IMG/VR virus record: IMGVR_UViG_3300030085_002431 | Span: 1-64,000 of that record | DNA length: 64,000 nt | Strand: one strand, 5' to 3' | In this document: positions 52,164-64,000 of the stretch, one piece after another | How the letters are laid out: each line of letters opens with the position of its first letter | How positions within the stretch are numbered: the first letter of the stretch is position 1 | Made by a program: the position numbers and the translations under genes | The notes under the pieces: model-generated | Databases searched by the model: none | The model's input: only the letters and a program-made list of their open reading frames with translations | What the model was told of the DNA's origin: nothing

Positions 52164-52171
52164 TATAAATA
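52164..52171 (+). promoter_or_regulatory. T4 late promoter, perfect consensus TATAAATA
   Basis: Intergenic, upstream of GGGGA RBS and ATG 52215. Confidence 0.85.
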
Positions 52172-52214: not shown

Positions 52215-52898
52215 ATGATAACGGAAAGTTTAACATATGCTGTTCCAGATGTTGCTTTTGTAGCAGGCATTTCTGGCAGTGTTACTCAAGACTTCCCATA
52301 TAATGGCCCAGAAAGCTTTTATGTGGAAATTGATGATGAGGGAGAAATCGTAAATATCGATGTTCCCTCAACACATAAAAATGCAATAGAGGTTACCTGG
52401 GCAGATAACCCAGAAATCTGTGCATTAGTTGGTCATTATTTTGTTGAAGATTGGAATGTAACACCTACTTTCGTCTCTGCTGATCTTGATGATGGATTTA
52501 CTCTTCCATCTGGTACTCCAACTACTTATCAAAAGAGAACTAATTATGAACTTGGTGACCTCTTCGAGGCCAAATATGATAGAGCAGCAGGAACCTGGTC
52601 AATGGAACAGATTGTCAAGCTAAAGGGTAGTCCTCTAATTGAAGAAGCAAAGAGAAGAAAGAGATATGTCAAGCAATATACTGACATGTTTGACTTTGCT
52701 GGTGATACTGGAACAGCAATTACTGCATTCCAAACAGCAATAGATAACTATCTTGCTGCTGCAGTATCAGTCCCTGTGTGGAACTATCTTCCTGAGCATT
52801 TTGCTCCTTACTTTGCTGATATCCCTAAAGTTCCTGCTCTTGCAGCAGCAGCATTTAAAGAACTTCCTGCAGATGAATCATTGGAGGCACTTAGCTGA
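52215..52898 (+). CDS. hypothetical protein between the two Cys-rich paralogues
   Basis: 227 aa, acidic, one Cys; TGA overlaps the next ATG. Confidence 0.8.
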   Translation: MITESLTYAVPDVAFVAGISGSVTQDFPYNGPESFYVEIDDEGEIVNIDVPSTHKNAIEVTWADNPEICALVGHYFVEDWNVTPTFVSADLDDGFTLPSGTPTTYQKRTNYELGDLFEAKYDRAAGTWSMEQIVKLKGSPLIEEAKRRKRYVKQYTDMFDFAGDTGTAITAFQTAIDNYLAAAVSVPVWNYLPEHFAPYFADIPKVPALAAAAFKELPADESLEALS

Positions 52899-53941
52899 TG
52901 GACGTATTAGCATATAGCGCATTTAATAGAAGGGCAGAACTTGATGCCCAAGTAACAGCTAAAGAGGTTCAACTAGAAGCTCTTAGGCAGTGTGTCAGAG
53001 ACATTGATGCCCAAGTAACATCTAGAGAGGCAGCAGCAAGCTGGTTATCGAGTGGTGAGTATTCAATGCTCTGCTGTCCTCATAAATTTTCAGATTATGA
53101 AACTTTAATTGAAAATTACGAACTTTCTACTGAAAATAATGGATTTAAAGTTTGTAATACACAATCTCAATTTAACTGTGGTAATAGCTGTACTTGGACA
53201 GTTCCAGCTGGTGTAACTTGTGCCAGATTCCAACTTTGGGGTGCTGGTGGTGGTTCTGGATCTGGATGCTGCTGTGGTGGTTCACCATTTGGTTCATCTG
53301 CAGCATATGCAACAGTTTCTTTACCAGTCGTAGAAGGTTGTCAATATACAATTTGTTCTGGTTGTTCATATTGTTGCTTCCCCACTACTGGAACTTGTGG
53401 AAGACTTCCTGGTTGCCCATCCTACGTTCAGGGACACGGATTAACTAATTTCTGTGCAGATGGTGGTCAAGGAAGAATTGGAACCATGTTTGCAATGTAT
53501 GGTCACCGTTGCAGGTGCAGAATGCAGAACATTCAGTGTAATGATTCTGGTGGTTGTATCTGCAGTTTCGGTGCAGATTATTGCTTCGATAATTCCTGTG
53601 CATCTTGCGGTAAGATTGGATGCTTTATCCCTGGTGCTATGTACTTTGGTGCAGCACACTGTGGATCAGTTGTTAGGGGTGTCCGTGGCATGTGGCCTGA
53701 GATTTGCTACGATACAAACCACTACGGTTACGAAATGAGACCACCAATGTACGGTCTTCACTGCTGCCTCTGGTGTTTCCCTTATAGTAGTGGTTATTGC
53801 TGTGGTTGCGAGTGCTCAGCATCCCGTGGATGCCACCGATATCCAGGAATGGGTGGTTGGGCATCTCACACAATGAGTGGTGCTACTGGTATCTGTGGTG
53901 ATATGGGTAGAATGGGTATGGTTTGCATTACCTATTGCTGA
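52898..53941 (+). CDS. Cys-rich, Gly-rich adhesin-like protein B (paralogue of 51089-52147)
   Basis: Same WTVPAG..CARFQLWGAG, GCPSYVQG.GLTNFCA.GG and CGD.GRMGMVC blocks; about 40 Cys by manual count. Confidence 0.8.
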   Translation: MDVLAYSAFNRRAELDAQVTAKEVQLEALRQCVRDIDAQVTSREAAASWLSSGEYSMLCCPHKFSDYETLIENYELSTENNGFKVCNTQSQFNCGNSCTWTVPAGVTCARFQLWGAGGGSGSGCCCGGSPFGSSAAYATVSLPVVEGCQYTICSGCSYCCFPTTGTCGRLPGCPSYVQGHGLTNFCADGGQGRIGTMFAMYGHRCRCRMQNIQCNDSGGCICSFGADYCFDNSCASCGKIGCFIPGAMYFGAAHCGSVVRGVRGMWPEICYDTNHYGYEMRPPMYGLHCCLWCFPYSSGYCCGCECSASRGCHRYPGMGGWASHTMSGATGICGDMGRMGMVCITYC

Positions 53942-53962: not shown

Positions 53963-53970
53963 TATAAATA
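53963..53970 (+). promoter_or_regulatory. T4 late promoter, perfect consensus TATAAATA
   Basis: Heads the glycosyltransferase-carbamoyltransferase-heptose operon. Confidence 0.85.
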
Positions 53971-54012
53971 GGAGTATCAGAAATTTATATTACTTGATTG
54001 GAGTATTTGTTC

Positions 54013-55107
54013 ATGGAGAAAGCATTTTTCATCAATGGTGGAGCAGGGAGAGTTCTCTGCTCCATTCCTGCGCTTGAGCATTATGCGGAAACACATGATG
54101 ACTTTGTAATTGTTGCAGAGTCATGGGGAGAGTTTTATGCAATGAGTCCAAAGCTCAGAGAAAAAGCATTTCCAATTCATCATAAGGGACTATTTAAGGA
54201 CCACCTTAGGGATAAAGAAATCATATCACCAGAACCATATCGTTTGAATGCTTATTTCAATCAAAAAGCAAATTTGATTCAAGCATTTGATATTCTCATA
54301 AATGGTGAAACTGAAGTTCCACCTACAAAAAAATTATCATTAGATATTAATAAAAAAGACCAAATTGTTGGTCATAATATGATTCAGGAAGTCAAAGAGA
54401 CCTTAAAGAAAGATAAAGTAATTGTATTTCAACCTTTTGGAAGCACTGTAGAGGTGCAAGGTAATTTTATAATTGACAGTAGTGGAAGAAGTTTTGAACT
54501 TTCTAATGTAGTTGAAATAATTAAAGAACTACAAAAAGATTATGGTATAATTATTATGTCTCAAGTTCCTATTCCAGGATGGGAACAAATGGGAGTTGCA
54601 TACCCTAAAGATGTAAGTCTTCTTCAGTGGGCAGGAATTATTAATGCTGCTGATTATTTTCTTGGATGTGACAGTGTTGGTCAACACTTGGCACATGCTG
54701 TAGGGAAACCAGCAACAGTTGTTATTGGGTCAACATTTCCAGAAAACATAACATATCCTGATAATAAGGATTTCAATGTTATCGATTTGGGGTTAAACAA
54801 AAGGTTATATAGTCCAATTAGAATGGTCTTTGATGATACTTCAGACAGAGTAAATGAATCCCTAATGGTAATGAATGAATCTGTTCTTAAAAAAATTAAA
54901 AAAGCAATTAAGGATAAGATTGGAGTAAGTAAAAAAACGGTGATTCCGCAACTTTCTCCTAATACTGATAATACACCATTACCCGTCCTTCCTGGAAAAA
55001 AAGCATCAGTAAAATCATCAACGAACGGATTTTCCCTTCCAGGAAAGCAAATAAATAAAAAGAAACCAATTGATGAAATTCTGGAATTAAACGAAATTAA
55101 AAATTGA
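54013..55107 (+). CDS. GT9-like (ADP-heptose:heptosyltransferase-type) glycosyltransferase
   Basis: INAADYFLGCDSVGQHLAHAVGKPATVVIGST matches the GT9 signature; KVIVFQPFGS. ATG 54013 is preferred over TTG 53998 because GGAG lies at 54000-54003. Confidence 0.72.
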   Translation: MEKAFFINGGAGRVLCSIPALEHYAETHDDFVIVAESWGEFYAMSPKLREKAFPIHHKGLFKDHLRDKEIISPEPYRLNAYFNQKANLIQAFDILINGETEVPPTKKLSLDINKKDQIVGHNMIQEVKETLKKDKVIVFQPFGSTVEVQGNFIIDSSGRSFELSNVVEIIKELQKDYGIIIMSQVPIPGWEQMGVAYPKDVSLLQWAGIINAADYFLGCDSVGQHLAHAVGKPATVVIGSTFPENITYPDNKDFNVIDLGLNKRLYSPIRMVFDDTSDRVNESLMVMNESVLKKIKKAIKDKIGVSKKTVIPQLSPNTDNTPLPVLPGKKASVKSSTNGFSLPGKQINKKKPIDEILELNEIKN

Positions 55108-55118
55108 GGTGAATTTTA

Positions 55119-56822
55119 ATGAGTACTATTGTTGCGTGTAATCGTGGGCATAACTCCGCCACGACGTTAGTTATTGATGGGGAAGTAAAGTTTTATATCG
55201 AAGAAGAACGTCTAACCAGAAGGAAGTATGATGGTGCTCCTTTGGCAGGACTATTGAAGGTATTTGATTATGTTGATGAAGTAGACCATCTTATTGTTTG
55301 TCATACGCATAGAGACGGTCCAAAACTGGACTGGACTAGGGAAGATGTATATGTTGGATTCATCCGAAAGATGATGAAAAACAAACCTTTCCAAGTTCAT
55401 TATGTTGATGAAATTCACCATGAGTTACATGCTGCTTGTGCATTTATTAACTCTGGATTTGAAACTGCTGCATGTTTAAGTGTTGATGGTGCTGGTAGTT
55501 TCCTTAAGAGTGATGCTTTTTCAGAGACAGGATATGAATTTGAAACAATTTTCAGAGCATCATATCCATTACAATTTGAGCAAGTTTATCAACATATCGG
55601 AACTCACTCTCGTGTTGGAATGTTACGTTTGGAGGATACTGAAAATAATTCAACTACAGTAGTAACTGAATATCCAGGTATCACAAAAGCATACGAAGCA
55701 ATCACTGATTACTGCGGTTTTACTTCTATTGAAGCAGGTAAAACCATGGGTCTTTCCCCTTATGGAAGAGAGAATCCTGATATTCCACCTTTTATTACTC
55801 ATGATGGGTGGGTAGATAGGTCAGTATTTACACCAACTTTCCCTAATGGTTCAGTGGTCAATAAAGAAAGATTTGATGCTATTAGAGAGGATTCCAATAT
55901 TCATGAAAAGGGTTCATATACTCAGTTCCAAAAAGATATGGCATATAAAATTCAGAGAGAATCTGAAAAGTATATGTTTAATTTAATCAGAAAAGCACAT
56001 GAGTTGACTGGTGAAACAAACTTTTGTATTGCTGGTGGATTTGGTCTAAATTGTGTTGCAAACTATAAGTATTGGAAAGAATTTCCCGATTTTAACATTT
56101 ATTGTGAACCAATTTCTCATGATGGGGGAACTCCTCTTGGTGCAGCAAAAATGTTGCATCTTAGAGAGATTGATTCATATGAACCACCTGCACCTACTAC
56201 TTCTATATACTATGGTCCACAATACGATCCAGCAACTTATGAGAGTGATTTAGTTGGTCTTGATGTTAAAGATACTTCATATGATGATGTTGCAAAATTA
56301 ATTCGTGAAGGTAATATCGTAACCATTTTTCAAGGCAGGTCTGAGGGTGGTCCTAGAGCACTTGGGAATCGTTCTATCCTATTTGACCCAACTATTCCTG
56401 ATGGAAAAGACATTGTTAATCGTGTGAAAAGGAGAGAATTCTTTAGACCATTTGCTTGCTCTATTAAGAAAGAAGCAGCTTGTGATTGGTTTGACCTTGC
56501 TGGTCGTGAGGAAACACCACATATGATGTATGCTGTAGATGCCCTCCCTGGTGTTGCAGAGAAAGTTCCTTCCGTCATCCATGTGGATGGAACATGTAGA
56601 ATTCAAACTGTTACTCCAGAACAGAATGAGCACTACTATAATCTCATTGATGCTTTTGAAAAATTAAGTGAAGTTCCTATTCTCTTCAATACTTCTTTCA
56701 ATCTTGGTGGTGACCCTCTAGTAGAAACAATTGAAGATGCAGTAAACACATTAAACAAGAGTGATATTGAGTATCTTTATCTCCCAGAAATTCAAAAACT
56801 TGTATACATTCCCAACATTTGA
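55119..56822 (+). CDS. NodU/CmcH/TobZ-family carbamoyltransferase 1 (motifs intact)
   Basis: EEERLTR.K, HHELHA, VDGAG, GKTMGL, GGFGLNCVAN, DGG, QGRSEGGPRALGNRSIL, KRREFFRPFA, HVDGTCRIQTV, NTSFN. Confidence 0.92.
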   Translation: MSTIVACNRGHNSATTLVIDGEVKFYIEEERLTRRKYDGAPLAGLLKVFDYVDEVDHLIVCHTHRDGPKLDWTREDVYVGFIRKMMKNKPFQVHYVDEIHHELHAACAFINSGFETAACLSVDGAGSFLKSDAFSETGYEFETIFRASYPLQFEQVYQHIGTHSRVGMLRLEDTENNSTTVVTEYPGITKAYEAITDYCGFTSIEAGKTMGLSPYGRENPDIPPFITHDGWVDRSVFTPTFPNGSVVNKERFDAIREDSNIHEKGSYTQFQKDMAYKIQRESEKYMFNLIRKAHELTGETNFCIAGGFGLNCVANYKYWKEFPDFNIYCEPISHDGGTPLGAAKMLHLREIDSYEPPAPTTSIYYGPQYDPATYESDLVGLDVKDTSYDDVAKLIREGNIVTIFQGRSEGGPRALGNRSILFDPTIPDGKDIVNRVKRREFFRPFACSIKKEAACDWFDLAGREETPHMMYAVDALPGVAEKVPSVIHVDGTCRIQTVTPEQNEHYYNLIDAFEKLSEVPILFNTSFNLGGDPLVETIEDAVNTLNKSDIEYLYLPEIQKLVYIPNI

Positions 56823-56834
56823 TTTTAAAAAATT

Positions 56835-58499
56835 ATGGATAACGAAAAATTCTATCAATTGACATATAATACTAGTGGAACTGCTTCTGCAGTTTTAACT
56901 AAAAATGATACTGTAGACAAGGTTTATATTGAAGAGAGATTTACAAACATGAAGGATAATATTCCTTTAATTTGTCTCAAAGATATTGCTCATGGAAAAT
57001 GCATTTCTCATATGGGAATAACATCAAACGATGATTATTCTGGAAACGAGTGGGCAGTACTAACTAAATTCTTCTCAATTTATAGTGGAAGTACTAGTAA
57101 AGAAAACAGCCAAATTGTAACTCATCAGGAATCTCATTATCTACAATCTCTATCTGCATCACTAAATTCTGGTTTTACAGAACCCCATGTTTTTTGCTTT
57201 ACTAAACCAGGAGCACAGTCTGAGTATGGTAAACCCCATGAAAGTATCTTTTTGATGAATCCAAAAAGAGGAGTTTGTCAACTTGCATTTCGACAAGTTT
57301 TAGGTCCAAATGTTCGAGTTAAGAGAGAAGAAGGCGTTCCAGAAGCATATTACAACAGAAAAACATTTTCTATTTGCAATGCATTTGAATCTATTAAAGA
57401 ATTTACAAATTGTTCAACACTTAAGGAGATGTATGCTGTTGGGCAGTTAGGAACTGATGATAAGATGATTCCTAGCATTCTATCCAAGTGTGGTGCTCAG
57501 ACTTCTCAATTTAAATTAGATGGGAAAAAGCAAATATTCAATGAATATGAATATATTAAGGAAGTAAGTGATGGTAAAAAGAAAAGAGATATTTCTTTAA
57601 ATCTAGTATATCGAATTCAAAAGGATTATGAACGTTATTTGATTGATGCTGTTAATGAATATTTCAGCAGCCAGACTAGAGATGTAGCATCAACGTCAAG
57701 GGAATTAATCATTACTGGAACACTTAACGATAATGTAAGAGCAAATTACTTATTGCTAAAATCTTTAGATGATGATTTTACTCTATATGTTGATCCGATT
57801 TCTAATGAAGTTAGTAATAGTATGGGACTCGCATATGAACTTATAGGTTCTTGTGAGATGGCACCTAAAGGAGTTGATAATTTTTATCTTGGTAGAGAAC
57901 TAGATCCAACTGATTACAATCTACTTGAGCAAGAAGATGAAAAAACTGTAACACCAAAAGAAGTTGCTGAGTTAATTGCAGACGGAAATGTTGTTGCTAT
58001 TGCTCAGGGACGTTCTGAAATAACAGACCATGCTCTTGGAAATCGTTCTATTGTTGCAGACCCAAGAACTATTGAATCTAAACAAATCTTAAGTAGGTCT
58101 AAGTATCAACCAGATCATATTCCATGTATTACATCCGTCCTGGAAGAAAGTGCTAGTGATTGGTTTGACATGGATAAATTGAAGAGTAGTCCAGAAGCAA
58201 TGTATGCAGTTGATGCTCTGGATGTTACTAAAGAACAAGCACAGGGTGCAGTCTATACCGATGGATCAACTAGAGTACAAACTGTTAATGAAGGATATAA
58301 TCAGAATTACTACAATTTAATTAAAGAATTTGGTGATTTGACTGGTGTTCCAATGCTTCTTAATACGTCTCTTAATATGCATACATATCCAATGTGTGAT
58401 AATATGGAAAATATTATGTCATTTATGAGATGCTCTGGAGTAAACTATTTGTATCTTCCAGAAACTGGAAAACTATTGTTTGTGCCTACTGATTCTTAA
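56835..58499 (+). CDS. carbamoyltransferase paralogue 2, full length but with degenerate catalytic motifs
   Basis: Retains QGRSE...ALGNRSI, DGSTRVQTV and LNTSLN but has lost most signature residues (see findings). Confidence 0.82.
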   Translation: MDNEKFYQLTYNTSGTASAVLTKNDTVDKVYIEERFTNMKDNIPLICLKDIAHGKCISHMGITSNDDYSGNEWAVLTKFFSIYSGSTSKENSQIVTHQESHYLQSLSASLNSGFTEPHVFCFTKPGAQSEYGKPHESIFLMNPKRGVCQLAFRQVLGPNVRVKREEGVPEAYYNRKTFSICNAFESIKEFTNCSTLKEMYAVGQLGTDDKMIPSILSKCGAQTSQFKLDGKKQIFNEYEYIKEVSDGKKKRDISLNLVYRIQKDYERYLIDAVNEYFSSQTRDVASTSRELIITGTLNDNVRANYLLLKSLDDDFTLYVDPISNEVSNSMGLAYELIGSCEMAPKGVDNFYLGRELDPTDYNLLEQEDEKTVTPKEVAELIADGNVVAIAQGRSEITDHALGNRSIVADPRTIESKQILSRSKYQPDHIPCITSVLEESASDWFDMDKLKSSPEAMYAVDALDVTKEQAQGAVYTDGSTRVQTVNEGYNQNYYNLIKEFGDLTGVPMLLNTSLNMHTYPMCDNMENIMSFMRCSGVNYLYLPETGKLLFVPTDS

Positions 58500-58501
58500 T
58501 A

Positions 58502-60124
58502 ATGTATATCTTATCCATACATGAATCTCATGATGCAAGTATGGCTCTTATTAAAGATGGGGAGGTTTTAATTAACCTCTCCCATGAAAGATTAAGTCAT
58601 ATAAAGCATGATAGGAGAATTAATTTATTTGCTTCAAAAATAAAACAGTATACAAATTATGTTGATAAGGTTGTTGTAAGTTGTCTTCATAATTCTATAA
58701 AAGAAGTTGATTTTCCACTTTATGCAAACTATTGTGGAATTGATTTTGGTGAGATAGTTGACTATTCTCCGTTTCATCACATATCACATTCATATTTGGC
58801 ATTCAAACATTCAAATTTTGAGAATGCTATTAGTGTTGTTCTTGATGGTGCAGGTTCTGAAAAACCAGAAGTACAGTATCATGGTGTTGCACTCAAAGAA
58901 TGCGAGTCCGCCTATCAAATAAATCCACATATGACTGCTTGCATTTATAAATCATATGTTGGTCAAAGATCTGAAAATTTTGAATTTCCATATGAAGTTG
59001 GTGGAATTGACAGAAGAATTGGTATTGGAATGGCATATAGTGGAATCACAGAGGCTCTTGGATATGGAGAAAATGAAGATGGTAAGACTATGGGATTATC
59101 TGCATATGCATCAGAAGAGCAAATAAATTCTATTCCAAAATTGGTAGAGTTAAGTCATGGTGCTGATGGAAATAAATTTAAGTTATTTCGTGGTGGTGTT
59201 TTAGGATATTGTTCAGCACTTATTGATATACCAAAAGAATTACATGTTGAATATGCTGGAAGAATTCAAAGGGACTTTGAGGAGTATGTTATTCAGTTAG
59301 TTCATGGTATTGTTCAAAAAACAGGGTGTAGGAATATTGTTTTATCTGGTGGTTGTTTCCTTAATTGTGTAGCAAATTTTAAACTAAGAAAATCACTACC
59401 CCCCGAATTTAATATATTTGTCGAACCAATGTCTGGTGATGATGGTATTGCACTAGCTAATGCTTTCATGGTTGATGATATGATCAACCCAAAGAATAGA
59501 AAACTGAATACATTATATCTTGGTAGTCAGTTGGAATATGAGTATACTTTAAGTGATGGAGAGTCTGAAGTAGTAACTACACCAAAAGAAGTAGCACAAT
59601 TAATTTCTGAAGGAAATTGTATTGCTATTGCTCAGGGACGTTCTGAGAGTGGTCCTAGAGCATTGGGTAATCGATCTATATTGTTTGACCCAAGAGATAA
59701 AGATGGTAAGGATAAGGTAAATAAAATTAAAAAGAGAGAATACTTCAGACCCTTTGCTGCTACAGTTCTTCATGAGAATAGTCAACAGTGGTTTGACATG
59801 GATAGTCTTGATGAAAGTCCATACATGACTTATGCTGTAGATGTACTACCAGACAAATCTAAGACAATACCTGCTGTAACACATGTCAATAATACATGTA
59901 GAATACAAACTCTTAAACAGGAACAAAATAAAAACTATTACGAATTAATAAATGAGTTTTATAAGTTGACAGATGTTCCTATGGTATTAAACACTTCATT
60001 CAATCTTGCTGGTGATACTATGGTTGAAACAATAGAGGATGCTTTAAAAACACTAAGACTTAGTGAATTGGAGTATCTTTACTTACCAGAAACTAAAAAA
60101 CTTATTCATGTCCCCAACAAATGA
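58502..60124 (+). CDS. NodU/CmcH/TobZ-family carbamoyltransferase 3 (motifs intact)
   Basis: HESHDAS, HHISH, LDGAG, DGKTMGL, SGGCFLNCVAN, DDG, QGRSESGPRALGNRSIL, KKREYFRPFA, NTSFN. Confidence 0.92.
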   Translation: MYILSIHESHDASMALIKDGEVLINLSHERLSHIKHDRRINLFASKIKQYTNYVDKVVVSCLHNSIKEVDFPLYANYCGIDFGEIVDYSPFHHISHSYLAFKHSNFENAISVVLDGAGSEKPEVQYHGVALKECESAYQINPHMTACIYKSYVGQRSENFEFPYEVGGIDRRIGIGMAYSGITEALGYGENEDGKTMGLSAYASEEQINSIPKLVELSHGADGNKFKLFRGGVLGYCSALIDIPKELHVEYAGRIQRDFEEYVIQLVHGIVQKTGCRNIVLSGGCFLNCVANFKLRKSLPPEFNIFVEPMSGDDGIALANAFMVDDMINPKNRKLNTLYLGSQLEYEYTLSDGESEVVTTPKEVAQLISEGNCIAIAQGRSESGPRALGNRSILFDPRDKDGKDKVNKIKKREYFRPFAATVLHENSQQWFDMDSLDESPYMTYAVDVLPDKSKTIPAVTHVNNTCRIQTLKQEQNKNYYELINEFYKLTDVPMVLNTSFNLAGDTMVETIEDALKTLRLSELEYLYLPETKKLIHVPNK

Positions 60125-60519
60125 AAATATCTTTTGTCAATGGTTGTTTTGATGTATTACATCCAGGACACGTTGAACTTTTAAATTATGCTAGTTCTTT
60201 TGGTGATTACTTAATTGTTGCTATTGACTCAGATAGAAAAGTGGCAGAGATGAAAGGTCCAGACAGACCGATATTCTCTCAATCTGATAGGGCATATATG
60301 CTAAAAGAAATAAGATGTGTTGATGTAGTACATATTTTTGATACTAGACAAGAACTAGAGTCTTTGCTAGATTCATTGAGACCTGATACAATGGTCGTAG
60401 GTTCAGACTGGAAAGGAAAAGAAGTAGTAGGTTCACAGTATGCCAAATCAGTCAAATTCTTCGACAGAATCGGAGACTACTCAACAACAAAAACAATTCA
60501 AGGTTCTTCTTATCGGTGA
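60121..60519 (+). CDS. HldE/RfaE-type heptose-1-phosphate nucleotidyltransferase (stand-alone domain)
   Basis: NGCFDVLHPGH (HxGH), LIVAIDSD..V...KG..RP, VVGSDW, YSTT. Confidence 0.9.
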   Translation: MKISFVNGCFDVLHPGHVELLNYASSFGDYLIVAIDSDRKVAEMKGPDRPIFSQSDRAYMLKEIRCVDVVHIFDTRQELESLLDSLRPDTMVVGSDWKGKEVVGSQYAKSVKFFDRIGDYSTTKTIQGSSYR

Positions 60520-61237
60520 TAGTTGCGAAGACGAGTACATTTATGGTACTTGTAAACGTATAAGTCCAGAAGCACCAGTTCCTATTATGGACTATTCCAG
60601 ACTGGAAACAAAATCTGGAATGGCAGGTAACGTATGTTTGAACTTACAGTCATTTGAAATGGACATAACGTTCTTAACTAACTCTGAGAAATTGGTTAAG
60701 ACACGATTTATTGATGAAAAGTCAAATCAGCAAATTCTTAGAGTTGATAATGAAGAGACTGTAAAACCGTTATTACTTCCAATTAGCACCGAAGGTTTTG
60801 ATGCAGTTGTAATTTCAGATTATAACAAAGGATATCTAAGTTATTCTAAAATTGAAGAAATAGTTTCTGGTTCCACATGCCCAGTGTTTATTGACAGTAA
60901 AAAAAGATTTTTACCTAACAAAGAAAATTGTTTTGTAAAAATAAATGACTTAGAGTATAGTCAATTGGATGAAAAGTGTCATATTGATAACTTAATTGTC
61001 ACTAAGGGTGCTGAGGGATGTTATTATAGAAATACTTTGTATCCAGCACAGAAAGTAAATGTTTATGATGTTGTCGGTGCAGGAGATACCTTTTTGGCAG
61101 CACTAGTTTTTAGTTATCTTGCTAGAGGTGATATGAGTGAATCAATTCGTTTTGCAAATAAAGCAGCAGCAGTTGTTGTTGGTCAACCAGGTACATATGT
61201 TTTACAGGAGGAAGATATAAATGAGATATGTAGTTGA
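60440..61237 (+). CDS. HldE/RfaE-type PfkB sugar kinase (heptose-7-phosphate kinase-like, stand-alone)
   Basis: LIGDSCEDEYIYG...RISPEAPVP, GMAGNV, ISDYNKG, VYDVVGAGDTFLAAL. Start codon uncertain. Confidence 0.88.
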   Translation: MPNQSNSSTESETTQQQKQFKVLLIGDSCEDEYIYGTCKRISPEAPVPIMDYSRLETKSGMAGNVCLNLQSFEMDITFLTNSEKLVKTRFIDEKSNQQILRVDNEETVKPLLLPISTEGFDAVVISDYNKGYLSYSKIEEIVSGSTCPVFIDSKKRFLPNKENCFVKINDLEYSQLDEKCHIDNLIVTKGAEGCYYRNTLYPAQKVNVYDVVGAGDTFLAALVFSYLARGDMSESIRFANKAAAVVVGQPGTYVLQEEDINEICS

Positions 61238-61550
61238 TATTGATGCAACCATTTGTACCCCAGGTACATGTGAAGCATGTAGATATGAAGGTTCCACACC
61301 AATTCAAGATAGGATTGATAAAATAAATAAGTTGTATGATGATGGGCATATCATCAAATACTTTACTGCCCGAGGCATGGGAAGGTATAATGATGATGCG
61401 GAAAAGGCACGGGAAAAATTTTACGGACTAACCAAAATGCAATTAGATATTTGGGGATGTAAGTATCATGAACTTATTCTCGGAAAACCATCAGCAGACT
61501 ATTACATAGATGACAAAGCTGTAAATTCAGATGACTTCTTCAAGACCTAG
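61221..61550 (+). CDS. minimal capless HAD-superfamily phosphatase
   Basis: VDIDATIC (motif I DxDxT), FTARG (II), GKPSADYYIDDK (III/IV). Confidence 0.82.
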   Translation: MRYVVDIDATICTPGTCEACRYEGSTPIQDRIDKINKLYDDGHIIKYFTARGMGRYNDDAEKAREKFYGLTKMQLDIWGCKYHELILGKPSADYYIDDKAVNSDDFFKT

Positions 61551-61911
61551 AGCAGGACAGGACATCAAATTCGTACCTAAGGGGTGGGGATTTGAAAAAT
61601 GGATTGTAAACTGTGAGCAATACTGCGGAAAACTTTTGTATATTGCTAAGGGAAAAAAGTGTTCATGGCACTACCACAATAAAAAAGATGAAGTTTTTTA
61701 TGTTCAAAGTGGTAAGATTAAAATTAAGTATGGTTGGTCAGACAATCAAGAATTAGGTTCCATAGCAATTTTGGAACGTGGTGATAAGTTTCACGTTCCA
61801 ATTGGTATGAGACATCAGATGTATGGTATGGAAGACACCGAACTGTTTGAGTTCAGTACAGAGCACTTTGACTCTGATAGTATTCGTGTCATCCCAGGAG
61901 ATACTCTTTGA
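61531..61911 (+). CDS. cupin-fold protein, sugar-isomerase-like
   Basis: VPKGWGFEKWI, CSWHYHNKKDEVFYV, FHVPIGMRHQM, EFSTEHFDSDSIR. Confidence 0.82.
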   Translation: MTSSRPRAGQDIKFVPKGWGFEKWIVNCEQYCGKLLYIAKGKKCSWHYHNKKDEVFYVQSGKIKIKYGWSDNQELGSIAILERGDKFHVPIGMRHQMYGMEDTELFEFSTEHFDSDSIRVIPGDTL

Positions 61912-62680
61912 CAGTTTTAAACTTACGGTTGCCCCATTCTTTTTGGGCACAAGTATAAATTTGATATTTACCTTTTAAATGGTCGGGGAATGGAATGTAT
62001 TCTATATCTCCACCATATTTTTTTATGCAGCATTCCGCTACGTGCTGGAAACTTACTGGGGCACTAGTTCCAAGGTCATAGATTCCTGAACCTTTTTTAT
62101 TATCCAGGACAACTTTAACAATGTCATCAACACAAATAAAGTCCCTTAGGAAGTCTTGAGAACCTTCAAATAATTTTAGTTTTCCAGTCTCTTCTATTTC
62201 TTTAGCAAATTTACTTACTGGACTTGCTTGGTTTCCTTTATCATTCTCACCATCACCATAGACATTGAAGTAACGGAATCCTTGAATTAATGGAAATCTA
62301 TCCATATTATCTTGAACCCAATAATCTGTTGTTACTTTGGATAATGCGTAGTAATTGAGTGGGTTGATAATTCCTTGTTCATTACCATAAACAGAAGCAG
62401 ATGAAGCATACTTAACTGGAATTTCATGTTTTGCTGCTTGCTCAAACAACCACTCACTAAATTCAATATTGAATGTAAATATTTGCTTTAAGTTTGTATT
62501 TGTAGTAGAGGACATGGCACCTTGGTGGATAATGCATTCTACTTCTTTCCACCTATAGAAATTTTTTCTCCAATGCCAACTATTGTTCTTCTCTACTTCT
62601 ATTACTTCTTTACCTTTTTTCTTTAGGGCGGCAAGAAATTTCTTTCCAATGAATCCCTTAGAACCAGTTAATATAATCAT
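61889..62680 (-). CDS. hldD: ADP-L-glycero-D-manno-heptose 6-epimerase-like extended SDR
   Basis: MIILTGSKGFIG (GxxGxxG), IIHQGAMSSTT, YASSASVYG, YALSK (YxxxK), GFRYFNVYG, RDFICVDD, YQIYTCA. Confidence 0.85.
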   Translation of the reverse strand: MIILTGSKGFIGKKFLAALKKKGKEVIEVEKNNSWHWRKNFYRWKEVECIIHQGAMSSTTNTNLKQIFTFNIEFSEWLFEQAAKHEIPVKYASSASVYGNEQGIINPLNYYALSKVTTDYWVQDNMDRFPLIQGFRYFNVYGDGENDKGNQASPVSKFAKEIEETGKLKLFEGSQDFLRDFICVDDIVKVVLDNKKGSGIYDLGTSAPVSFQHVAECCIKKYGGDIEYIPFPDHLKGKYQIYTCAQKEWGNRKFKTVKEYLLG

Positions 62681-62687
62681 ATAAATA
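62680..62687 (+). promoter_or_regulatory. T4 late promoter, perfect consensus TATAAATA
   Basis: 29 nt upstream of ATG 62717; its first base overlaps the start codon of the minus-strand epimerase. Confidence 0.8.
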
Positions 62688-62716: not shown

Positions 62717-64000
62717 ATGGCCTTTGGCTTACTACAATCAATTATACCAGAAGTTGATAAGAACACAACCTTATATGGTGCTCCAAGTCAGACATTGGCG
62801 CAAGGAAAGATTTCAATTTCTAGTAAAAATTATAATCCAGTACGAGTACGTGTTTGCTTATCAACCACATCTGCGTATGATGATGTTGAGTATTTAGAAT
62901 ATGATAGGTATATCAATTATGGTGAAACCTATGAGACTGGAATTATTAGTGTTGGAAACGGCCAACGAATTGTAGTACGAGCTGACCATACAAAAGTAAA
63001 TTTTGTATTTACTGGAGAAGAATTTAATGAAGGTTCTGGAATACTCAATGGAAATTATTCTGGATTATTGGGTAATGTAATATCTACTAATTCTGATGAT
63101 AAGTTACTATACTCTGTTCCTACTGGATTAAAGGCCAATACAGCAACATTAAACATCGTTAATTTAAAATCATTCCCAGCAAAAGCAAGGATTGGTTTAT
63201 TAAAATCCGTAGATGCAATTACAGATTTTAGTTCTGAGGATTATATTGAATATGATGTAGAAATTGGACCAAATGATACTTATGTAAGGTCTGACTTAAA
63301 ATTAGATGAATCACAAAAAATTGTTGTATCATCATCTAATGATTCTAGGCTACAGTTTTTAGTTCATGGAAGACTTAGATCTACTCTTTCAGGAGGACAA
63401 GATGACTTTGATGTAGATGGAAGATTATATGTTGCTGGTCCTGCAGGTATTGGAACTGTCCCAAGAGCAAAACTGGATGTAATTGGTGGTGCTCTTATTT
63501 CTGGTCAGGCAAAAGTTGGTCTAGGAATGACCATCGGTAATGAACTATTTGTTGGTCAAAACTTATCAGTTGGTGGGACAATTACTGGAACATTTGACCC
63601 AACAGATATAAGCAATGCAATTTTCACACAAGGTTCATTACCTGCTGTTGATGGTTCTGCACTGACTGGAGTTACCGCACAGGGTACTGGTGTTGTAATT
63701 CAAGATGACACAGTGCCTCAAGGTACTGCCACTACTTTAAACTTTAATGGTGGTATTGCAGCAGTAACTAATGGTAGTACTGCTACTGTTAGTTTGGCAA
63801 ATCAAGTTAATGTTCTTCAAACATTGACTGTTAATAGTAATAAATTTATTGTGGAAGGTGCAACTGGAAATACTACAGTTGCTGGAAATGTCAATGTTCA
63901 ATCAAATCTCACAGTTTCTGGTCATATTGATGTACTAAATAGTCATATCGTGAATGTTGGGTATCCAACATCAGATCATCATGCGGTGTCAAGGTCATAT
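62717..64000 (+). CDS. fibre-like virion protein, 5' part (runs off the window)
   Basis: Open from ATG 62717 to the window end (428 codons, MAFGLLQSIIPEVDKNTTLYGAP...); two EYIEYD-type domains, then GSLPAVDGSALTG and GVVIQDD..PQGTATTLNF fibre motifs. Absent from the ORF track because there is no stop. Confidence 0.82.
   Translation, partial: MAFGLLQSIIPEVDKNTTLYGAPSQTLAQGKISISSKNYNPVRVRVCLSTTSAYDDVEYLEYDRYINYGETYETGIISVGNGQRIVVRADHTKVNFVFTGEEFNEGSGILNGNYSGLLGNVISTNSDDKLLYSVPTGLKANTATLNIVNLKSFPAKARIGLLKSVDAITDFSSEDYIEYDVEIGPNDTYVRSDLKLDESQKIVVSSSNDSRLQFLVHGRLRSTLSGGQDDFDVDGRLYVAGPAGIGTVPRAKLDVIGGALISGQAKVGLGMTIGNELFVGQNLSVGGTITGTFDPTDISNAIFTQGSLPAVDGSALTGVTAQGTGVVIQDDTVPQGTATTLNFNGGIAAVTNGSTATVSLANQVNVLQTLTVNSNKFIVEGATGNTTVAGNVNVQSNLTVSGHIDVLNSHIVNVGYPTSDHHAVSRSY

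What the first reader, a model, noticed from the sequence alone, without database searches (positions are those of the whole stretch)
53963..62680. Late-expressed heptose, glycosyltransferase and triple carbamoyltransferase cluster: candidate virion-decoration system
Seen: a perfect late promoter (53963) heads a gap-free run of GT9-like transferase, three carbamoyltransferases, HldE-type nucleotidyltransferase, HldE-type kinase, HAD phosphatase and cupin, ending at an HldD-like epimerase. The run is embedded between fibre/adhesin genes. Established: kinase, phosphatase, nucleotidyltransferase and HldD make ADP-L-glycero-D-manno-heptose; GT9 enzymes use ADP-heptose; bacterial AAH/TibC enzymes heptosylate adhesins; NodU/TobZ/CmcH enzymes O-carbamoylate sugar hydroxyls using carbamoyl phosphate and ATP. 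LPS-type genes are known in some cyanomyoviruses, but I know of no defined product. Inference: the phage builds a carbamoylated heptose glycan at assembly time, on its own fibres (shielding, adsorption) or on the host envelope (superinfection exclusion).
Basis: partly seen in the sequence, partly recalled or inferred. Interest (0 to 1): 0.8.

Follow-up and report, generated by a model that had tools for sequence, protein, structure and literature searches.

The report
Cyanophage tail-fibre heptose-carbamoyl sugar cassette
A marine cyanophage carries, inside its tail-fibre genes, a set of enzymes that probably makes the sugar ADP-heptose, attaches it to something and adds carbamoyl groups; the gene set is already known from phage P-SSM2, but its target, most likely the cysteine- and glycine-rich fibre proteins encoded next door, has never been tested.

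Summary
A TATAAATA late-promoter motif at 53963 lies 50 nt before a tightly packed run: a GT9-like transferase, three NodU/TobZ-type carbamoyltransferases, an HldE-type nucleotidyltransferase and kinase, a small HAD phosphatase and a cupin.

Corrections:
- The HldD-like epimerase is on the opposite strand, with its own extended -10 motif, so it is not in the late unit.
- The middle carbamoyltransferase has lost its metal and catalytic motifs and is probably a pseudoenzyme.
- No GmhA is present. The metal-binding cupin, which travels with the kinase, is the candidate isomerase.

The cassette is not new. Orthologous clusters exist in P-SSM2 (genes 307-313), S-SSM7, S-CAM1/3 and Sf-FS3, called "LPS genes" since 2005-2010 with no known product. 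Three carbamoyltransferases are rare.

New here:
- The transferase belongs to a distinct GT9-like clade in which the catalytic Asp is replaced by Arg, and it is not TibC-like.
- In 80 viral contigs it sits beside a carbamoyltransferase (76/80) and just after Cys/Gly-rich fibre proteins (63/66). Heptose genes follow in only 29/45.

The best reading is carbamoyl-heptose decoration of fibre-tip proteins. This is inferred, not shown. Host-envelope or DNA modification remain possible.

The parts
53963..53970 (+). T4-type late promoter motif TATAAATA, 50 nt before the GT start
   Evidence: An identical motif sits at -50 in relative L007. ATAAATA lies 36-50 nt upstream of the GT in L008, L011 and S-CAM1, with near matches in P-SSM2 and Sf-FS3.
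54013..55107 (+). GT9-like glycosyltransferase (364 aa): GT-B core, disordered linker (residues 311-353) and a conserved C-terminal KKKPIDEILEL helix
   Evidence: phrog_8954, E 1e-145. PF01075 18 bits. Model pLDDT 80. Foldseek best hits WaaF, WaaC and TibC. Donor motif D220..H225 aligns with WaaC D261..H266. WaaC Asp13 aligns with a conserved Arg13.
55119..56822 (+). Carbamoyltransferase CT1, ortholog of the cluster carbamoyltransferase of P-SSM2 (PSSM2_308) and S-CAM1; predicted active
   Evidence: Carbam_trans_N 84 bits and Carbam_trans_C 193 bits. Matches solved carbamoyltransferases 7xb6, GdmN and TobZ (E 1e-46 to 1e-52), with H11, HHxxH, DG and D motifs conserved. Tree. dN/dS 0.09.
56835..58499 (+). 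Carbamoyltransferase paralog CT2, degenerate (probable pseudoenzyme)
   Evidence: No Carbam_trans_N hit. The catalytic His, HHxxH, DG, D and KRExFRPF positions are all substituted. Branch length 2.97 in the tree. Intact and under weaker purifying selection (dN/dS 0.30), with an ortholog in L007.
58502..60124 (+). Carbamoyltransferase CT3, second predicted active copy, from a different lineage than CT1
   Evidence: Carbam_trans_N 71 bits and Carbam_trans_C 203 bits. Motifs conserved. Groups with the second CT of L011 (support 81/77); placement relative to PSSM2_177 is unresolved. Best isolate match is PSSM2_177 at 43%.
60121..60519 (+). HldE domain II-type heptose-1-phosphate nucleotidyltransferase (132 aa)
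   Evidence: TIGR02199, 120 bits. HxGH (FDVLHPGH) and STT motifs present.
60440..61237 (+). HldE domain I-type (PfkB) heptose-7-phosphate kinase; overlaps the nucleotidyltransferase gene by 80 nt
   Evidence: TIGR02198, 156 bits. phrog_8133.
61221..61550 (+). Small capless HAD phosphatase (109 aa). Public phage records call its orthologs 'phosphoheptose isomerase', which is probably a misnomer
   Evidence: TIGR01689 EcbF-BcbF. Motif DIDAT and the later HAD motifs are present. Matches PDB 9iqw 'capsule biosynthesis protein' and 1xpj. No SIS domain.
61531..61911 (+). Metal-binding cupin (126 aa); candidate sedoheptulose-7-P isomerase replacing GmhA, or a nucleotide-heptose epimerase
   Evidence: Cupin_2 hit. 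HxH..E..H motif. Model pLDDT 88. Foldseek best hits are the CapF cupin domain, D-lyxose/mannose isomerases and phosphomannose isomerase. Atlas neighbours carry Lyx_isomer and MannoseP_isomer families. Co-occurs with the kinase in 26 of 29 contigs.
61889..62680 (-). HldD-like ADP-heptose 6-epimerase (263 aa) on the opposite strand, overlapping the end of the cupin gene by 23 nt
   Evidence: TIGR02197, 211 bits. 38% identity to E. coli RfaD, with GxxGxxG, SSA and YxxxK conserved. Minus-strand orientation is conserved in P-SSM2, S-SSM7, S-CAM1, Sf-FS3 and many contigs.
62741..62749 (-). Extended -10 motif TGGTATAAT, about 60 nt upstream of the epimerase start; candidate sigma-70-type promoter
   Evidence: TGnTA(T/A)A(A/C)T is also found upstream of the epimerase in L007, L008, L012, L014, S-CAM1 and L011, at different distances.
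51089..52147 (+). Cys/Gly-rich fibre-like protein, paralog 1 (8.8% Cys, 14.7% Gly); candidate acceptor
   Evidence: phrog_35878. Composition.
52215..52898 (+). 227-aa acidic protein between the two paralogs, headed by TATAAATA at 52164; function unknown
   Evidence: Conserved in the same position in most related contigs.
52898..53941 (+). Cys/Gly-rich fibre-like protein, paralog 2 (11.5% Cys, 13.8% Gly), N-terminus rich in heptad-like charged residues; candidate acceptor
   Evidence: phrog_35878. Weak PF21722 Gly_rich_2 hit. Atlas neighbours are Gly_rich_2 and ALK/LTK glycine-rich domain proteins.
46902..50432 (+). Tail fibre protein (1176 aa) upstream of the cassette
   Evidence: phrog_9851, 1377 bits.
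62717..64000 (+). Downstream tail-fibre gene (runs off the window), headed by TATAAATA at 62680
   Evidence: phrog_11338, E 1e-39..

Best explanation
This is a late-expressed sugar-decoration cassette in the tail-fibre module of a T4-like cyanophage (Kyanoviridae).

Inferred pathway:
1. Host sedoheptulose-7-phosphate is isomerised, probably by the metal-binding cupin, because no GmhA is present.
2. The PfkB kinase phosphorylates the product at C1.
3. The small HAD phosphatase removes the 7-phosphate.
4. The HldE-type nucleotidyltransferase activates the sugar to ADP-D,D-heptose.
5. The separately transcribed HldD homologue epimerises it to ADP-L,D-heptose.
6. A soluble GT9-like transferase of a phage-specific clade puts the heptose on an acceptor. 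This is most likely the Cys/Gly-rich fibre-tip proteins encoded directly upstream, modified in the cytoplasm during assembly.
7. CT1 and CT3 O-carbamoylate the heptose using carbamoyl phosphate and ATP, as happens on HepII of the Pseudomonas LPS core. CT2 is catalytically dead and may act as a partner subunit.

What is shown and what is inferred:
- Shown: gene content, motifs, fold, synteny and co-occurrence.
- Inferred: every substrate, the acceptor and the timing.

My rough sub-confidences are: the cassette makes a nucleotide-heptose, 0.7; the carbamoyl group goes on that sugar, 0.5; the acceptor is a virion fibre protein, 0.4.
For: - Enzyme identities.
- GT fold and donor motif.
- The whole 64-kb window is baseplate and fibre genes on one strand; this is its only enzyme island.
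- A late-promoter motif lies at -50 and is partly conserved in relatives.
- One 265-nt metatranscriptome contig spans the GT/CT1 junction.
- The same position, between fibre genes and gp13, is kept in P-SSM2, S-SSM7, S-CAM1, Sf-FS3 and a T4-like phage whose gp14 is only 45% identical to cyanophage gp14 (L022).
- In 80 IMG/VR loci, GT and CT are adjacent in 76/80. A Cys/Gly-rich protein lies within 4 kb upstream in 63/66 (128 such proteins, Cys 5.9-11.4%).
- A distant GT homologue sits between tail-fibre genes in Vibrio Schitoviridae, with no heptose genes in the 18.6-kb stretch read.
- Tailoring content varies between relatives: 1-3 carbamoyltransferases, a sulfotransferase, an Asp/Arg hydroxylase, P4H-like oxygenases.
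- Host LPS lacks heptose and Kdo (PMC4515613).
- The GT acceptor lobe is neutral to acidic, against +6/+7 in WaaF/WaaC, and no enzyme has a membrane segment.
- Cupin and kinase co-occur in 26 of 29 contigs, and a transketolase-like gene sits beside the kinase in P-TIM68.
- 7-O-carbamoyl heptose is a known natural structure (PMC8005017).
Against: - No direct evidence exists for any product, acceptor or timing.
- The RNA evidence is a single short contig that could be DNA carry-over.
- 16 of 45 contigs with enough downstream sequence have GT-CT but no heptose genes nearby, so the donor sugar may not always be heptose, or it is supplied from elsewhere.
- Carbamoyltransferases of the same families also sit in non-fibre contexts: beside purM in P-SSM2 and beside nrd/talC in S-MbCM6.
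- The GT lacks the catalytic Asp of GT9 enzymes, scores below the Pfam threshold, and fails all TibC/AAH-specific features.
- Gene adjacency to fibre genes also fits a host-recognition island that alters the host surface, which is the view taken in the literature (PMC7029224, PMC12801897).
- The cupin fold search cannot separate an isomerase from a CapF-like epimerase.
- All HldE/HldD family scores are below the NCBIfam cut-offs.
Confidence: 0.4

Rival explanations
1. Host-envelope remodelling. The cassette makes carbamoyl-heptose that is added to a host glycolipid, LPS or other envelope glycan during infection. This would change the cell surface to block superinfection, stop progeny sticking to debris or deter grazers. 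It is the standard reading of cyanophage and pelagiphage 'LPS genes'.
For: - The GT's nearest solved structures are LPS heptosyltransferases.
- The literature interprets LPS-type genes in the fibre 'host recognition cluster' this way (PMC7029224, PMC3037559, PMC12801897).
- The same five heptose genes also occur in clusters with other glycosyltransferases near hli genes in S-T4 and P-TIM68 (S-SM2 also carries the kinase, but its context was not read).
Against: - Marine Synechococcus LPS has no heptose or Kdo, so the canonical acceptor is missing (PMC4515613).
- The GT lacks the basic acceptor lobe and the catalytic Asp of WaaC/WaaF.
- The cassette has no flippase, ligase, polyprenyl-phosphate transferase or membrane protein.
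- A late promoter in a lytic phage leaves little time for surface turnover.
- The tight GT-CT link to Cys/Gly-rich fibre proteins (63/66) is not predicted by this model.
Confidence: 0.22
2. DNA hypermodification. The heptose is transferred to a modified base in phage DNA to evade restriction, as shown for metavirome clusters that place heptose on 5-hydroxymethylcytosine.
For: - Phage clusters with a HAD/kinase, a nucleotidyltransferase and a GT-B enzyme do place mono- and di-heptose on 5hmC (bioRxiv 10.1101/2023.12.21.572611).
- 1xpj-like small HAD phosphatases are predicted to serve in arabinosyl-hydroxycytosine DNA pathways (PMC13326640).
- 2OG oxygenase genes often lie near the cluster in relatives.
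Against: - The GT folds like GT9 enzymes, and T4 beta-glucosyltransferase is not among the 50 matches listed.
- No hydroxymethylase, C5-methyltransferase or Tet/JBP-type enzyme was seen in the window or in the flanks examined. The nearby oxygenases are P4H, PhyH or Asp/Arg-hydroxylase types.
- The cassette sits in the late structural module, not the replication module.
- The acceptor lobe is neutral to acidic.
- The GT tail does not resemble the clamp-binding tail of gp43.
Confidence: 0.07
3. The carbamoyltransferases act directly on the neighbouring Cys-rich proteins or on another non-heptose substrate, for example S- or O-carbamoylation of protein side chains, as HypF carbamoylates the HypE cysteine. 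In that case the heptose pathway is a frequent but separable add-on.
For: - GT-CT with Cys/Gly-rich proteins is the invariant core, while heptose genes are missing in 16/45 contigs.
- P-RSM4 has a CT of the cluster-associated clade beside fibre genes and 2OG oxygenases without any heptose gene.
- CT3 gives weak HypF hits.
Against: - All solved relatives found here (TobZ, GdmN, the novobiocin carbamoyltransferase, 7xb6) act on small-molecule hydroxyls, as NodU is reported to do.
- The HypF similarity is only the shared Kae1/YrdC scaffold.
- GT-CT adjacency is most simply explained by sequential action on one glycan.
Confidence: 0.08
4. Non-functional cargo: 'stuffer' DNA or decaying host-derived genes with no role in infection.
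For: Raised as a possibility for cyanophage LPS genes by Sullivan et al. 2010 (PMC3037559).
Against: - Strong purifying selection: dN/dS 0.03-0.14 for the nucleotidyltransferase, HAD, cupin, epimerase, CT1 and GT against a relative with dS 0.3-1.3.
- Synteny is conserved across genera and hundreds of metagenomic contigs.
- Catalytic motifs are intact in all but CT2.
Confidence: 0.02

Closest known systems
P-SSM2 genes PSSM2_307-313 (T4-GC 302-308) and the orthologous clusters of P-SSM5, S-SSM7/S-SSM6a, S-CAM1, S-CAM3 and Sf-FS3
   Same: Same gene families in the same order at the same place (after the fibre and Cys/Gly-rich genes, before the next fibre or gp13), with the epimerase on the opposite strand. 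GT identity to the window is 45-61% in tblastn.
   Different: Those clusters have one full-length carbamoyltransferase (S-SSM7 and Sf-FS3 add a truncated one). The window has three, one of them degenerate. Relatives carry other inserts instead: 2OG oxygenases, halogenase, methyltransferase, sulfotransferase. Their function is equally unknown, and their records label the HAD 'phosphoheptose isomerase' and the cupin 'cysteine dioxygenase'.
Pseudomonas LPS inner core: WaaC/WaaF heptosyltransferases plus the putative carbamoyltransferase WapO (PA5005), giving 7-O-carbamoyl-L,D-heptose
   Same: Same combination of chemistry: ADP-L,D-heptose, a GT9-type transferase and a NodU-family carbamoyltransferase. 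It shows that carbamoyl-heptose exists in nature (PMC8005017).
   Different: The acceptor there is Kdo2-lipid A at the membrane. The phage host lacks Kdo and heptose in its LPS, the phage GT lacks the catalytic Asp and the basic lobe, and the phage genes are embedded in virion genes. Similarity of CT1 to WapO was not tested because no WapO sequence was at hand.
TibC/AAH bacterial autotransporter heptosyltransferases (BAHT)
   Same: A GT-B heptosyltransferase encoded next to the adhesin it modifies in the cytoplasm. TibC is among the top structural matches (E 3e-8).
   Different: The phage GT has no N-terminal beta-barrel, no four-Cys iron finger (two Cys in total) and an Arg where the catalytic Asp110 equivalent should be (PMC4358343). 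It works perhaps like a BAHT but is not a member.
ADP-heptose pathway GmhA-HldE-GmhB-HldD of Gram-negative bacteria
   Same: Kinase, nucleotidyltransferase and epimerase are clear homologues. The phosphatase step is covered by a HAD enzyme.
   Different: HldE is split into two genes. GmhB is replaced by a 109-aa capless HAD of the TIGR01689/1xpj type. GmhA (SIS fold) is absent, with a cupin in its place. HldD lacks about 40 residues of the NADP domain.
Phage DNA-glycosylation gene clusters that add heptose to 5hmC (Burke et al., bioRxiv 10.1101/2023.12.21.572611)
   Same: Phage-encoded HAD/kinase, nucleotidyltransferase and GT-B enzymes that use a heptose donor.
   Different: Those clusters pair with a C5-methyltransferase and a 5mYOX/TET enzyme, and their GT resembles T4 beta-GT. 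Neither is seen here.
Virion protein glycosylation in other viruses (mycobacteriophage capsid and tail glycosylation; chlorovirus PBCV-1 capsid). Apart from a mention of a PBCV-1 capsid-protein glycosyltransferase in the paper read, this is recalled from my own knowledge and was not checked here
   Same: Virus-encoded glycosyltransferases located in or near structural genes that decorate virion proteins.
   Different: Different sugars and transferase families. No heptose or carbamoyl group has been reported on those virions, as far as I know.

Membership tests
GT9 heptosyltransferases (Pfam PF01075; WaaC/WaaF type) | GT-B fold closest to solved GT9 enzymes | tested here: met
   Foldseek against the PDB: WaaF 1psw E 9e-11; WaaC 6dfe, 2gt1, 2h1h about 1e-9; GT9 3tov 8e-9. 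Model pLDDT 80.
GT9 heptosyltransferases (Pfam PF01075; WaaC/WaaF type) | Score above the Pfam gathering threshold | tested here: not met
   18 bits against a cut-off of 22; only residues 206-257 align. A few metagenomic relatives do carry a precomputed PF01075 hit.
GT9 heptosyltransferases (Pfam PF01075; WaaC/WaaF type) | ADP-heptose-binding motif of the C-lobe (WaaC D261...H266) | tested here: met
   CDSVGQH aligns with VDTGLSH of WaaC. D220 and H225 are invariant in 52 family members down to 25% identity.
GT9 heptosyltransferases (Pfam PF01075; WaaC/WaaF type) | Catalytic Asp at the end of the first strand (WaaC Asp13; TibC Asp110) | tested here: not met
   WaaC SSMGDVLHTLPAL aligns with GGAGRVLCSIPAL. 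The Arg is conserved in at least 90% of family members, including the Vibrio and Aeromonas phage homologues.
BAHT family (TibC/AAH adhesin heptosyltransferases) | N-terminal beta-barrel domain (about 97 residues) | tested here: not met
   The model starts with the first Rossmann strand at residue 3. Family definition from PMC4358343.
BAHT family (TibC/AAH adhesin heptosyltransferases) | Four-cysteine iron-finger insertion | tested here: not met
   The window GT has only two Cys, C16 and C219.
BAHT family (TibC/AAH adhesin heptosyltransferases) | Heptosylates a neighbouring adhesin on Ser residues | not testable with these tools
   Only adjacency to Cys/Gly-rich fibre proteins is shown.
NodU/TobZ/CmcH O-carbamoyltransferases | Two-domain architecture: Kae1-like N domain (PF02543) and YrdC-like C domain (PF16861) | tested here: met
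   CT1 scores 84 and 193 bits, CT3 71 and 203 bits. CT2 has only the C domain, at 131 bits.
NodU/TobZ/CmcH O-carbamoyltransferases | Conserved catalytic His and metal ligands (H, HHxxH, DG, D) and the KRExFRPF / GPRALGNRS motifs | tested here: met
   Met for CT1 and CT3. Not met for CT2, where the positions read G, HY-Q, K, E, YQPDHIPC and TDHALGNRS.
NodU/TobZ/CmcH O-carbamoyltransferases | O-carbamoylation of a sugar hydroxyl using carbamoyl phosphate and ATP | not testable with these tools
   Inferred from homology only.
HldE (bifunctional heptose kinase / adenylyltransferase) | Best family match to rfaE domain I and domain II models, with catalytic motifs | tested here: inconclusive
   TIGR02198 scores 156 bits (cut-off 345) and TIGR02199 120 bits (cut-off 181.5). 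These are the best hits by far and the HxGH and STT motifs are present, but both are below the equivalog cut-offs and the protein is split into two genes. A fused form exists in L022.
HldD (ADP-glycero-manno-heptose 6-epimerase) | Full-length homology with the GxxGxxG, SSA and YxxxK residues | tested here: met
   38% identity to E. coli RfaD over 263 aa, E 9e-49, motifs conserved. TIGR02197 scores 211 bits, below the 274.6 cut-off, partly because about 40 residues are deleted.
GmhA (sedoheptulose-7-phosphate isomerase, SIS fold) | A SIS-domain protein in the cluster | tested here: not met
   No ORF of the cluster hits a SIS or GmhA model in Pfam or NCBIfam. The ORF that public records call 'phosphoheptose isomerase' is a HAD phosphatase.
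GmhB (heptose-1,7-bisphosphate 7-phosphatase, HAD) | HAD catalytic motifs; membership of the GmhB subfamily | tested here: inconclusive
   DxDxT and the later HAD motifs are present. The family is the 110-130 aa TIGR01689/1xpj/9iqw type, not GmhB itself.
T4-type late transcription unit | TATAAATA at a suitable distance upstream of the first gene | tested here: met
   Motif at -50. Four of the five motifs in the window lie 37-53 nt before gene starts.
T4-type late transcription unit | Late (gp55/gp33-dependent) timing of the transcripts | not testable with these tools
   Only one 265-nt metatranscriptome contig lies across the GT/CT1 junction. The P-SSM2 time course (Lin et al. 2016) is not in the library.

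The most novel reading that the evidence does not exclude
Marine T4-like cyanophages post-translationally decorate their receptor-binding fibre-tip proteins (Cys/Gly-rich, Gly_rich_2-like) with heptose, using a phage-specific GT9-like transferase. The phage brings its own ADP-heptose pathway, because cyanobacterial hosts make no heptose for LPS, and that pathway includes a cupin acting as a non-orthologous sedoheptulose-7-P isomerase. Lineage-variable tailoring enzymes (one or two active carbamoyltransferases, a sulfotransferase, protein hydroxylases) then write a variable 'glycan code' on the adhesins that tunes adsorption or shields them. This would finally explain the 'LPS genes' that have sat in cyanophage genomes since 2005.
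Probability: 0.35. Interest if true: 0.8.

Novelty: new variant of a known kind. Interest (0 to 1): 0.55.

Why it matters
Cyanomyoviruses are among the most abundant viruses in the ocean, and their 'LPS genes' have lacked a product or role for twenty years.

If the cassette glycosylates fibre-tip adhesins, that would be:
- the first chemical modification known on a marine phage's receptor-binding proteins;
- a new source of host-range variation that fibre sequences alone do not reveal;
- a new use of ADP-heptose outside LPS and autotransporters.

The analysis also makes the question cheap to test. Cultured carriers exist (P-SSM2, S-CAM1, S-SSM7). E. coli supplies the donor sugar for co-expression. 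A gmhA mutant can test the cupin.

Independently of the acceptor, three points may be useful to annotators and enzymologists:
- a GT9-like clade with Arg in place of the catalytic Asp;
- a cupin that may replace GmhA;
- a conserved pseudo-carbamoyltransferase.

Two widely propagated annotations, 'phosphoheptose isomerase' and 'cysteine dioxygenase', look wrong.

Tried and rejected
1. **GT tail as a sliding-clamp peptide.** This would have pointed to DNA as the acceptor. P-SSM2 gp43 ends in NLDSFFS, unlike KKKPIDEILEL, so the idea was dropped.
2. **Profile comparison of the GT family with WaaC/WaaF.** hhalign aligned only the donor motif. The N-terminal Asp-to-Arg correspondence rests on a MAFFT alignment and visual agreement.
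3. **RNA evidence for timing.** Metatranscriptomes from samples that hold the phage gave one 265-nt contig. That is too little to say anything about timing or transcript ends.
4. **Sigma-70 promoter and terminator scans.** They were at chance level. The extended -10 motif before the epimerase was found by eye and by comparison across loci.
5. **Cupin function by sequence and fold.** Sugar isomerases and the CapF epimerase domain score alike, so the function is unresolved.
6. **Cellular origin of the epimerase.** The genome scan found nothing closer than 36% identity. The method matches patterns only, so it does not show that hosts lack the pathway.
7. **Three carbamoyltransferases as a recent tandem triplication.** Rejected: they fall in separate clades.
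9. **Viral-contig scan with the broad alignment A5.** It failed for lack of conserved stretches; A1 was used instead.
10. **tblastn of a Cys/Gly-rich paralog against isolate phages.** It found only the P-SSM2 lineage, which is too insensitive to test co-occurrence among isolates.

Full report
**What the window is.** All large ORFs of the 64-kb window match baseplate, tail-fibre or virion proteins of T4-like phages, and all lie on the + strand. The nearest isolates are cyanomyoviruses (Kyanoviridae). No isolate genome matches at more than about 77% nucleotide identity, but the same sequence is present at 99% of sampled words in marine metagenome runs from several studies. The region 53963-62680 is the only enzyme-coding island in this structural block.

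**Checking the observation.** TATAAATA lies at 53963-53970, 50 nt before an ATG at 54013. Alignment with 30 relatives shows this ATG, not the TTG at 53998, to be the start of the first gene. The motif count in the window is not above chance (5 found, 5.9 expected). However, all five copies are on the + strand, and four lie 37-53 nt before gene starts (32263, 52215, 54013, 62717), in intergenic gaps that I estimate from the ORF list at roughly 1.6% of the window. The ORFs that follow are packed with gaps of at most 12 nt or overlaps of 4-80 nt.

- a weak GT9 hit for the first protein;
- three carbamoyltransferases;
- an HldE domain II-type nucleotidyltransferase (TIGR02199, 120 bits);
- an HldE domain I-type PfkB kinase (TIGR02198, 156 bits);
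- a small HAD (TIGR01689);
- a cupin;
- an HldD-type epimerase (TIGR02197, 211 bits; 38% identical to E. coli RfaD over its whole length).

Motifs are intact: HxGH and STT in the nucleotidyltransferase, DIDAT in the HAD, HxH..E..H in the cupin, and GxxGxxG/YxxxK in the epimerase.

Four corrections are needed:
1. The epimerase is on the minus strand, convergent with the run.
2. The GT start moves to 54013.
3. One carbamoyltransferase is degenerate.
4. The first pathway enzyme, GmhA, is missing.

**The transferase.** An AlphaFold model built on 36 relatives (pLDDT 80, pTM 0.79) shows a GT-B core, a disordered linker and a short conserved C-terminal helix. Its best PDB matches are all GT9-type: WaaF, WaaC, a Veillonella GT9 and TibC (E 9e-11 to 3e-8). 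T4 beta-glucosyltransferase is not among the 50 matches listed. The C-lobe motif CDSVGQH aligns with the ADP-heptose-binding VDTGLSH of WaaC, and D220 and H225 are invariant across 52 family members down to 25% identity.

The N-terminal strand aligns GGAGRVLCSIPAL with WaaC SSMGDVLHTLPAL. The Asp regarded as the catalytic base in WaaC (my recollection of the WaaC literature), and equivalent to Asp110 of TibC (PMC4358343), is therefore a conserved Arg here. An EPY motif (E74) is the best conserved acidic candidate.

The protein has none of the features that define TibC/AAH: no N-terminal beta-barrel and no four-Cys iron finger. Its acceptor lobe is neutral to acidic (net -6 to +4 in seven family members), against +7 and +6 in WaaC and WaaF. 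No enzyme of the cluster has a membrane segment. It is therefore a separate, phage-centred GT9-like clade: 3511 relatives in the 90% clusters, 539 representatives at 50%.

**The carbamoyltransferases.** CT1 and CT3 have both Pfam domains and keep the catalytic His, the HHxxH/DG/D metal site and the C-domain motifs seen in the solved enzymes 7xb6, GdmN and TobZ. CT2 has lost all of these. The positions read G, HY-Q, K and E, and KRExFRPF has become YQPDHIPC.

In a maximum-likelihood tree the three are not recent duplicates:
- CT1 is the ortholog of the single cluster enzyme of P-SSM2, S-CAM1 and many contigs.
- CT3 groups with the second enzyme of a two-CT contig. Its best isolate match (43%) is PSSM2_177, which lies beside purM in the replication module.
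- CT2 sits on a branch of length 2.97.

CT2 is nevertheless intact in the window and in a relative with 84% GT identity (L007), with dN/dS 0.30 against 0.09 for CT1. It is a maintained, probably non-catalytic paralog. 'Triple carbamoylation' is therefore at most double.

**The sugar pathway.** Kinase, phosphatase, nucleotidyltransferase and epimerase cover four of the five steps from sedoheptulose-7-P to ADP-L,D-heptose. No SIS-type GmhA is present. The ORF that public phage records and PHROGs call 'phosphoheptose isomerase' is the HAD phosphatase.

The cupin (called 'cysteine dioxygenase' in those records) is metal-binding. Its model (pLDDT 88) matches D-lyxose/mannose isomerases, phosphomannose isomerase and the CapF cupin domain about equally well. 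Its Atlas neighbours carry Lyx_isomer and MannoseP_isomer families.

The cupin travels with the kinase in every arrangement seen:
- in the fibre cassette;
- in the separate glycosyltransferase clusters of S-T4 and P-TIM68, where a transketolase-like gene sits beside the kinase in P-TIM68;
- in a divergent T4-like phage with a fused HldE and no HAD.

In the viral contigs, kinase and cupin co-occur in 26 of 29 cases, while the HAD is present in only 14. Making the manno-configured heptose-7-P from sedoheptulose-7-P is the same aldose-ketose chemistry as fructose-6-P to mannose-6-P. A cupin isomerase replacing GmhA is therefore my preferred reading. A CapF-like epimerase role cannot be excluded.

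**The epimerase is regulated apart.** It is on the minus strand in P-SSM2, S-SSM7, S-CAM1, Sf-FS3 and the P-SSM2-like contigs, while other arrangements occur in more distant contigs. On its own strand an extended -10 motif, TGGTATAAT, lies at 62741-62749. TGnTA(T/A)A(A/C)T is also found upstream of the gene in six other loci at differing distances. This suggests host-type rather than late transcription. It is an inference from motifs only.

**Comparative context.** The cassette is not new. P-SSM2 genes 307-313, S-SSM7 120-133, S-CAM1 216-222, S-CAM3 and Sf-FS3 have the same families in the same order at the same place. Sullivan et al. 2010 list four of them among co-occurring 'LPS genes' of unknown function (PMC3037559). 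Zaragoza-Solas et al. 2020 describe LPS-type genes in the fibre 'host recognition cluster' and propose host-surface modification (PMC7029224).

What varies is the tailoring content:
- one carbamoyltransferase (most loci), two (L011) or three (the window and L007);
- a sulfotransferase between cupin and epimerase, plus an Asp/Arg hydroxylase before the GT (L008, L010, L025, L029);
- P4H-like 2OG oxygenases, a halogenase and a methyltransferase (S-SSM7, Sf-FS3).

In 80 IMG/VR loci with a GT at least 52% identical:
- a carbamoyltransferase lies within 200 nt of the GT in 76;
- a Cys/Gly-rich protein lies within 4 kb upstream in 63 of the 66 loci with enough sequence (128 proteins; Cys 5.9-11.4%, Gly about 16%);
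- heptose genes lie within 10 kb downstream in only 29 of 45.

The conserved core is thus Cys/Gly-rich protein(s) followed by GT and CT, with the heptose pathway a frequent companion. These Cys/Gly-rich proteins resemble the Gly_rich_2 (PF21722) and ALK/LTK glycine-rich domains, and they occur as two to four paralogs in P-SSM2, S-CAM1 and S-SSM7. A 244-aa homologue of the GT lies between two tail-fibre genes in Vibrio N4-like phages, with no heptose genes in the 18.6-kb stretch read.

**Mechanism and rivals.** Marine Synechococcus LPS contains neither heptose nor Kdo (PMC4515613), so the canonical GT9 acceptor is absent and the phage must supply the donor itself. Carbamoyl-heptose has a natural precedent in the Pseudomonas inner core, where HepII is 7-O-carbamoylated, attributed to the putative carbamoyltransferase WapO (PMC8005017).

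The following points together make decoration of fibre-tip proteins during assembly the best-supported reading (about 0.4):
- the late-promoter motif;
- the position inside a purely structural block;
- the soluble enzymes;
- the non-basic acceptor lobe;
- the tight linkage to Cys/Gly-rich fibre proteins.

Host-envelope remodelling remains a serious rival (about 0.2). DNA heptosylation has a real precedent (bioRxiv 10.1101/2023.12.21.572611), but the fold, the context and the lack of any base-hydroxymethylating enzyme nearby speak against it (about 0.07). Direct action of the carbamoyltransferases on the Cys-rich proteins is a long shot (about 0.08). Stuffer DNA is excluded by strong purifying selection.

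**Limits.** No product, acceptor or timing has been observed. Family scores for the HldE and HldD homologues are below the curated cut-offs. The one RNA contig across the GT/CT1 junction could be DNA carry-over. Contigs without heptose genes may carry them elsewhere. The Asp-to-Arg correspondence rests on sequence alignment, not on a superposed structure.

**Verdict.** The finding is real but mostly already annotated. It is a rare three-carbamoyltransferase variant of a known cyanophage cassette. Its interest lies in the still-open function, which the comparative results now focus on a specific and cheap experiment.

Noticed in passing
window 61221-61550 and 61531-61911; orthologs PSSM2_311/312, SXBG_00218/00217, SSSM7_130/131: Public records and PHROGs name the HAD phosphatase 'phosphoheptose isomerase' (phrog_1238) and the cupin 'cysteine dioxygenase' (phrog_7851). 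The first has DxDxT HAD motifs and no SIS domain. The second looks like a sugar isomerase or epimerase cupin. Both names appear to be propagated errors.
   Followed up: yes
window 62741-62749 (minus strand); L007, L008, L012, L014, L001, L011: An extended -10 motif (TGGTATAAT or a close variant) is conserved upstream of the minus-strand epimerase. In the window it lies inside the first codons of the downstream fibre gene. The late motif TATAAATA at 62680-62687 begins at the first base of the epimerase start codon on the other strand, so two divergent promoters share about 70 nt.
   Followed up: partly
window 51089-52147 and 52898-53941: Two paralogous proteins with 9-11% Cys and about 14% Gly. 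Their N-termini are rich in heptad-like charged residues, and they are separated by an acidic 227-aa protein. It is unexplained how such Cys-rich proteins fold in the cytoplasm, and whether the cysteines bind metal or form disulfides after release.
   Followed up: partly
window 54943-55107 (GT residues 311-364): The GT ends in a disordered, length-variable linker followed by a conserved basic-acidic peptide (KKKPIDEILELxE). The tail is present in P-SSM2- and S-SSM7-like members and absent in S-CAM1, L022 and the Vibrio homologues. It may be a docking peptide. It does not resemble the clamp-binding tail of gp43.
   Followed up: partly
window 60440-60519: The kinase ORF overlaps the nucleotidyltransferase ORF by 80 nt in another frame. 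The same overlap is annotated in S-CAM1 and P-SSM2, while one gene caller (L007) starts the kinase later. In the divergent phage L022 the two are fused into one HldE-like protein.
   Followed up: no
L008 14551-15339, L010 6295-7083; also L025 and L029: A sulfotransferase (PF00685) is inserted between cupin and epimerase, and an Asp/Arg hydroxylase (PF05118) sits just before the GT, in relatives that have one or two carbamoyltransferases. This suggests interchangeable tailoring of one product.
   Followed up: partly
L021 (P-TIM68) 6847-7992: A transketolase-like gene lies directly before the heptose kinase in P-TIM68. This fits sedoheptulose-7-phosphate as the precursor.
   Followed up: no
L061 (IMG/VR contig 3300020198_000018): One viral contig appears to carry two GT-carbamoyltransferase pairs in tandem, plus a third carbamoyltransferase on the other strand.
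   Followed up: no
L017 (P-RSM4) 4251-5915 and flanks: P-RSM4 has a carbamoyltransferase of the cluster-associated clade beside its fibre genes and four 2OG oxygenase genes, with no GT9-like or heptose gene. Its neighbours are Gly-rich but not Cys-rich.
   Followed up: partly
window 46362-46369: The fifth TATAAATA lies inside the 149-aa tail protein gene (46057-46506), about 140 nt before the next gene. It may be an internal late promoter or a chance match.
   Followed up: no
window 55041-55305: A single 265-nt contig from a marine metatranscriptome (run X25) matches with one mismatch across the GT stop and the CT1 start. This is consistent with co-transcription, but DNA carry-over cannot be excluded.
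   Followed up: partly
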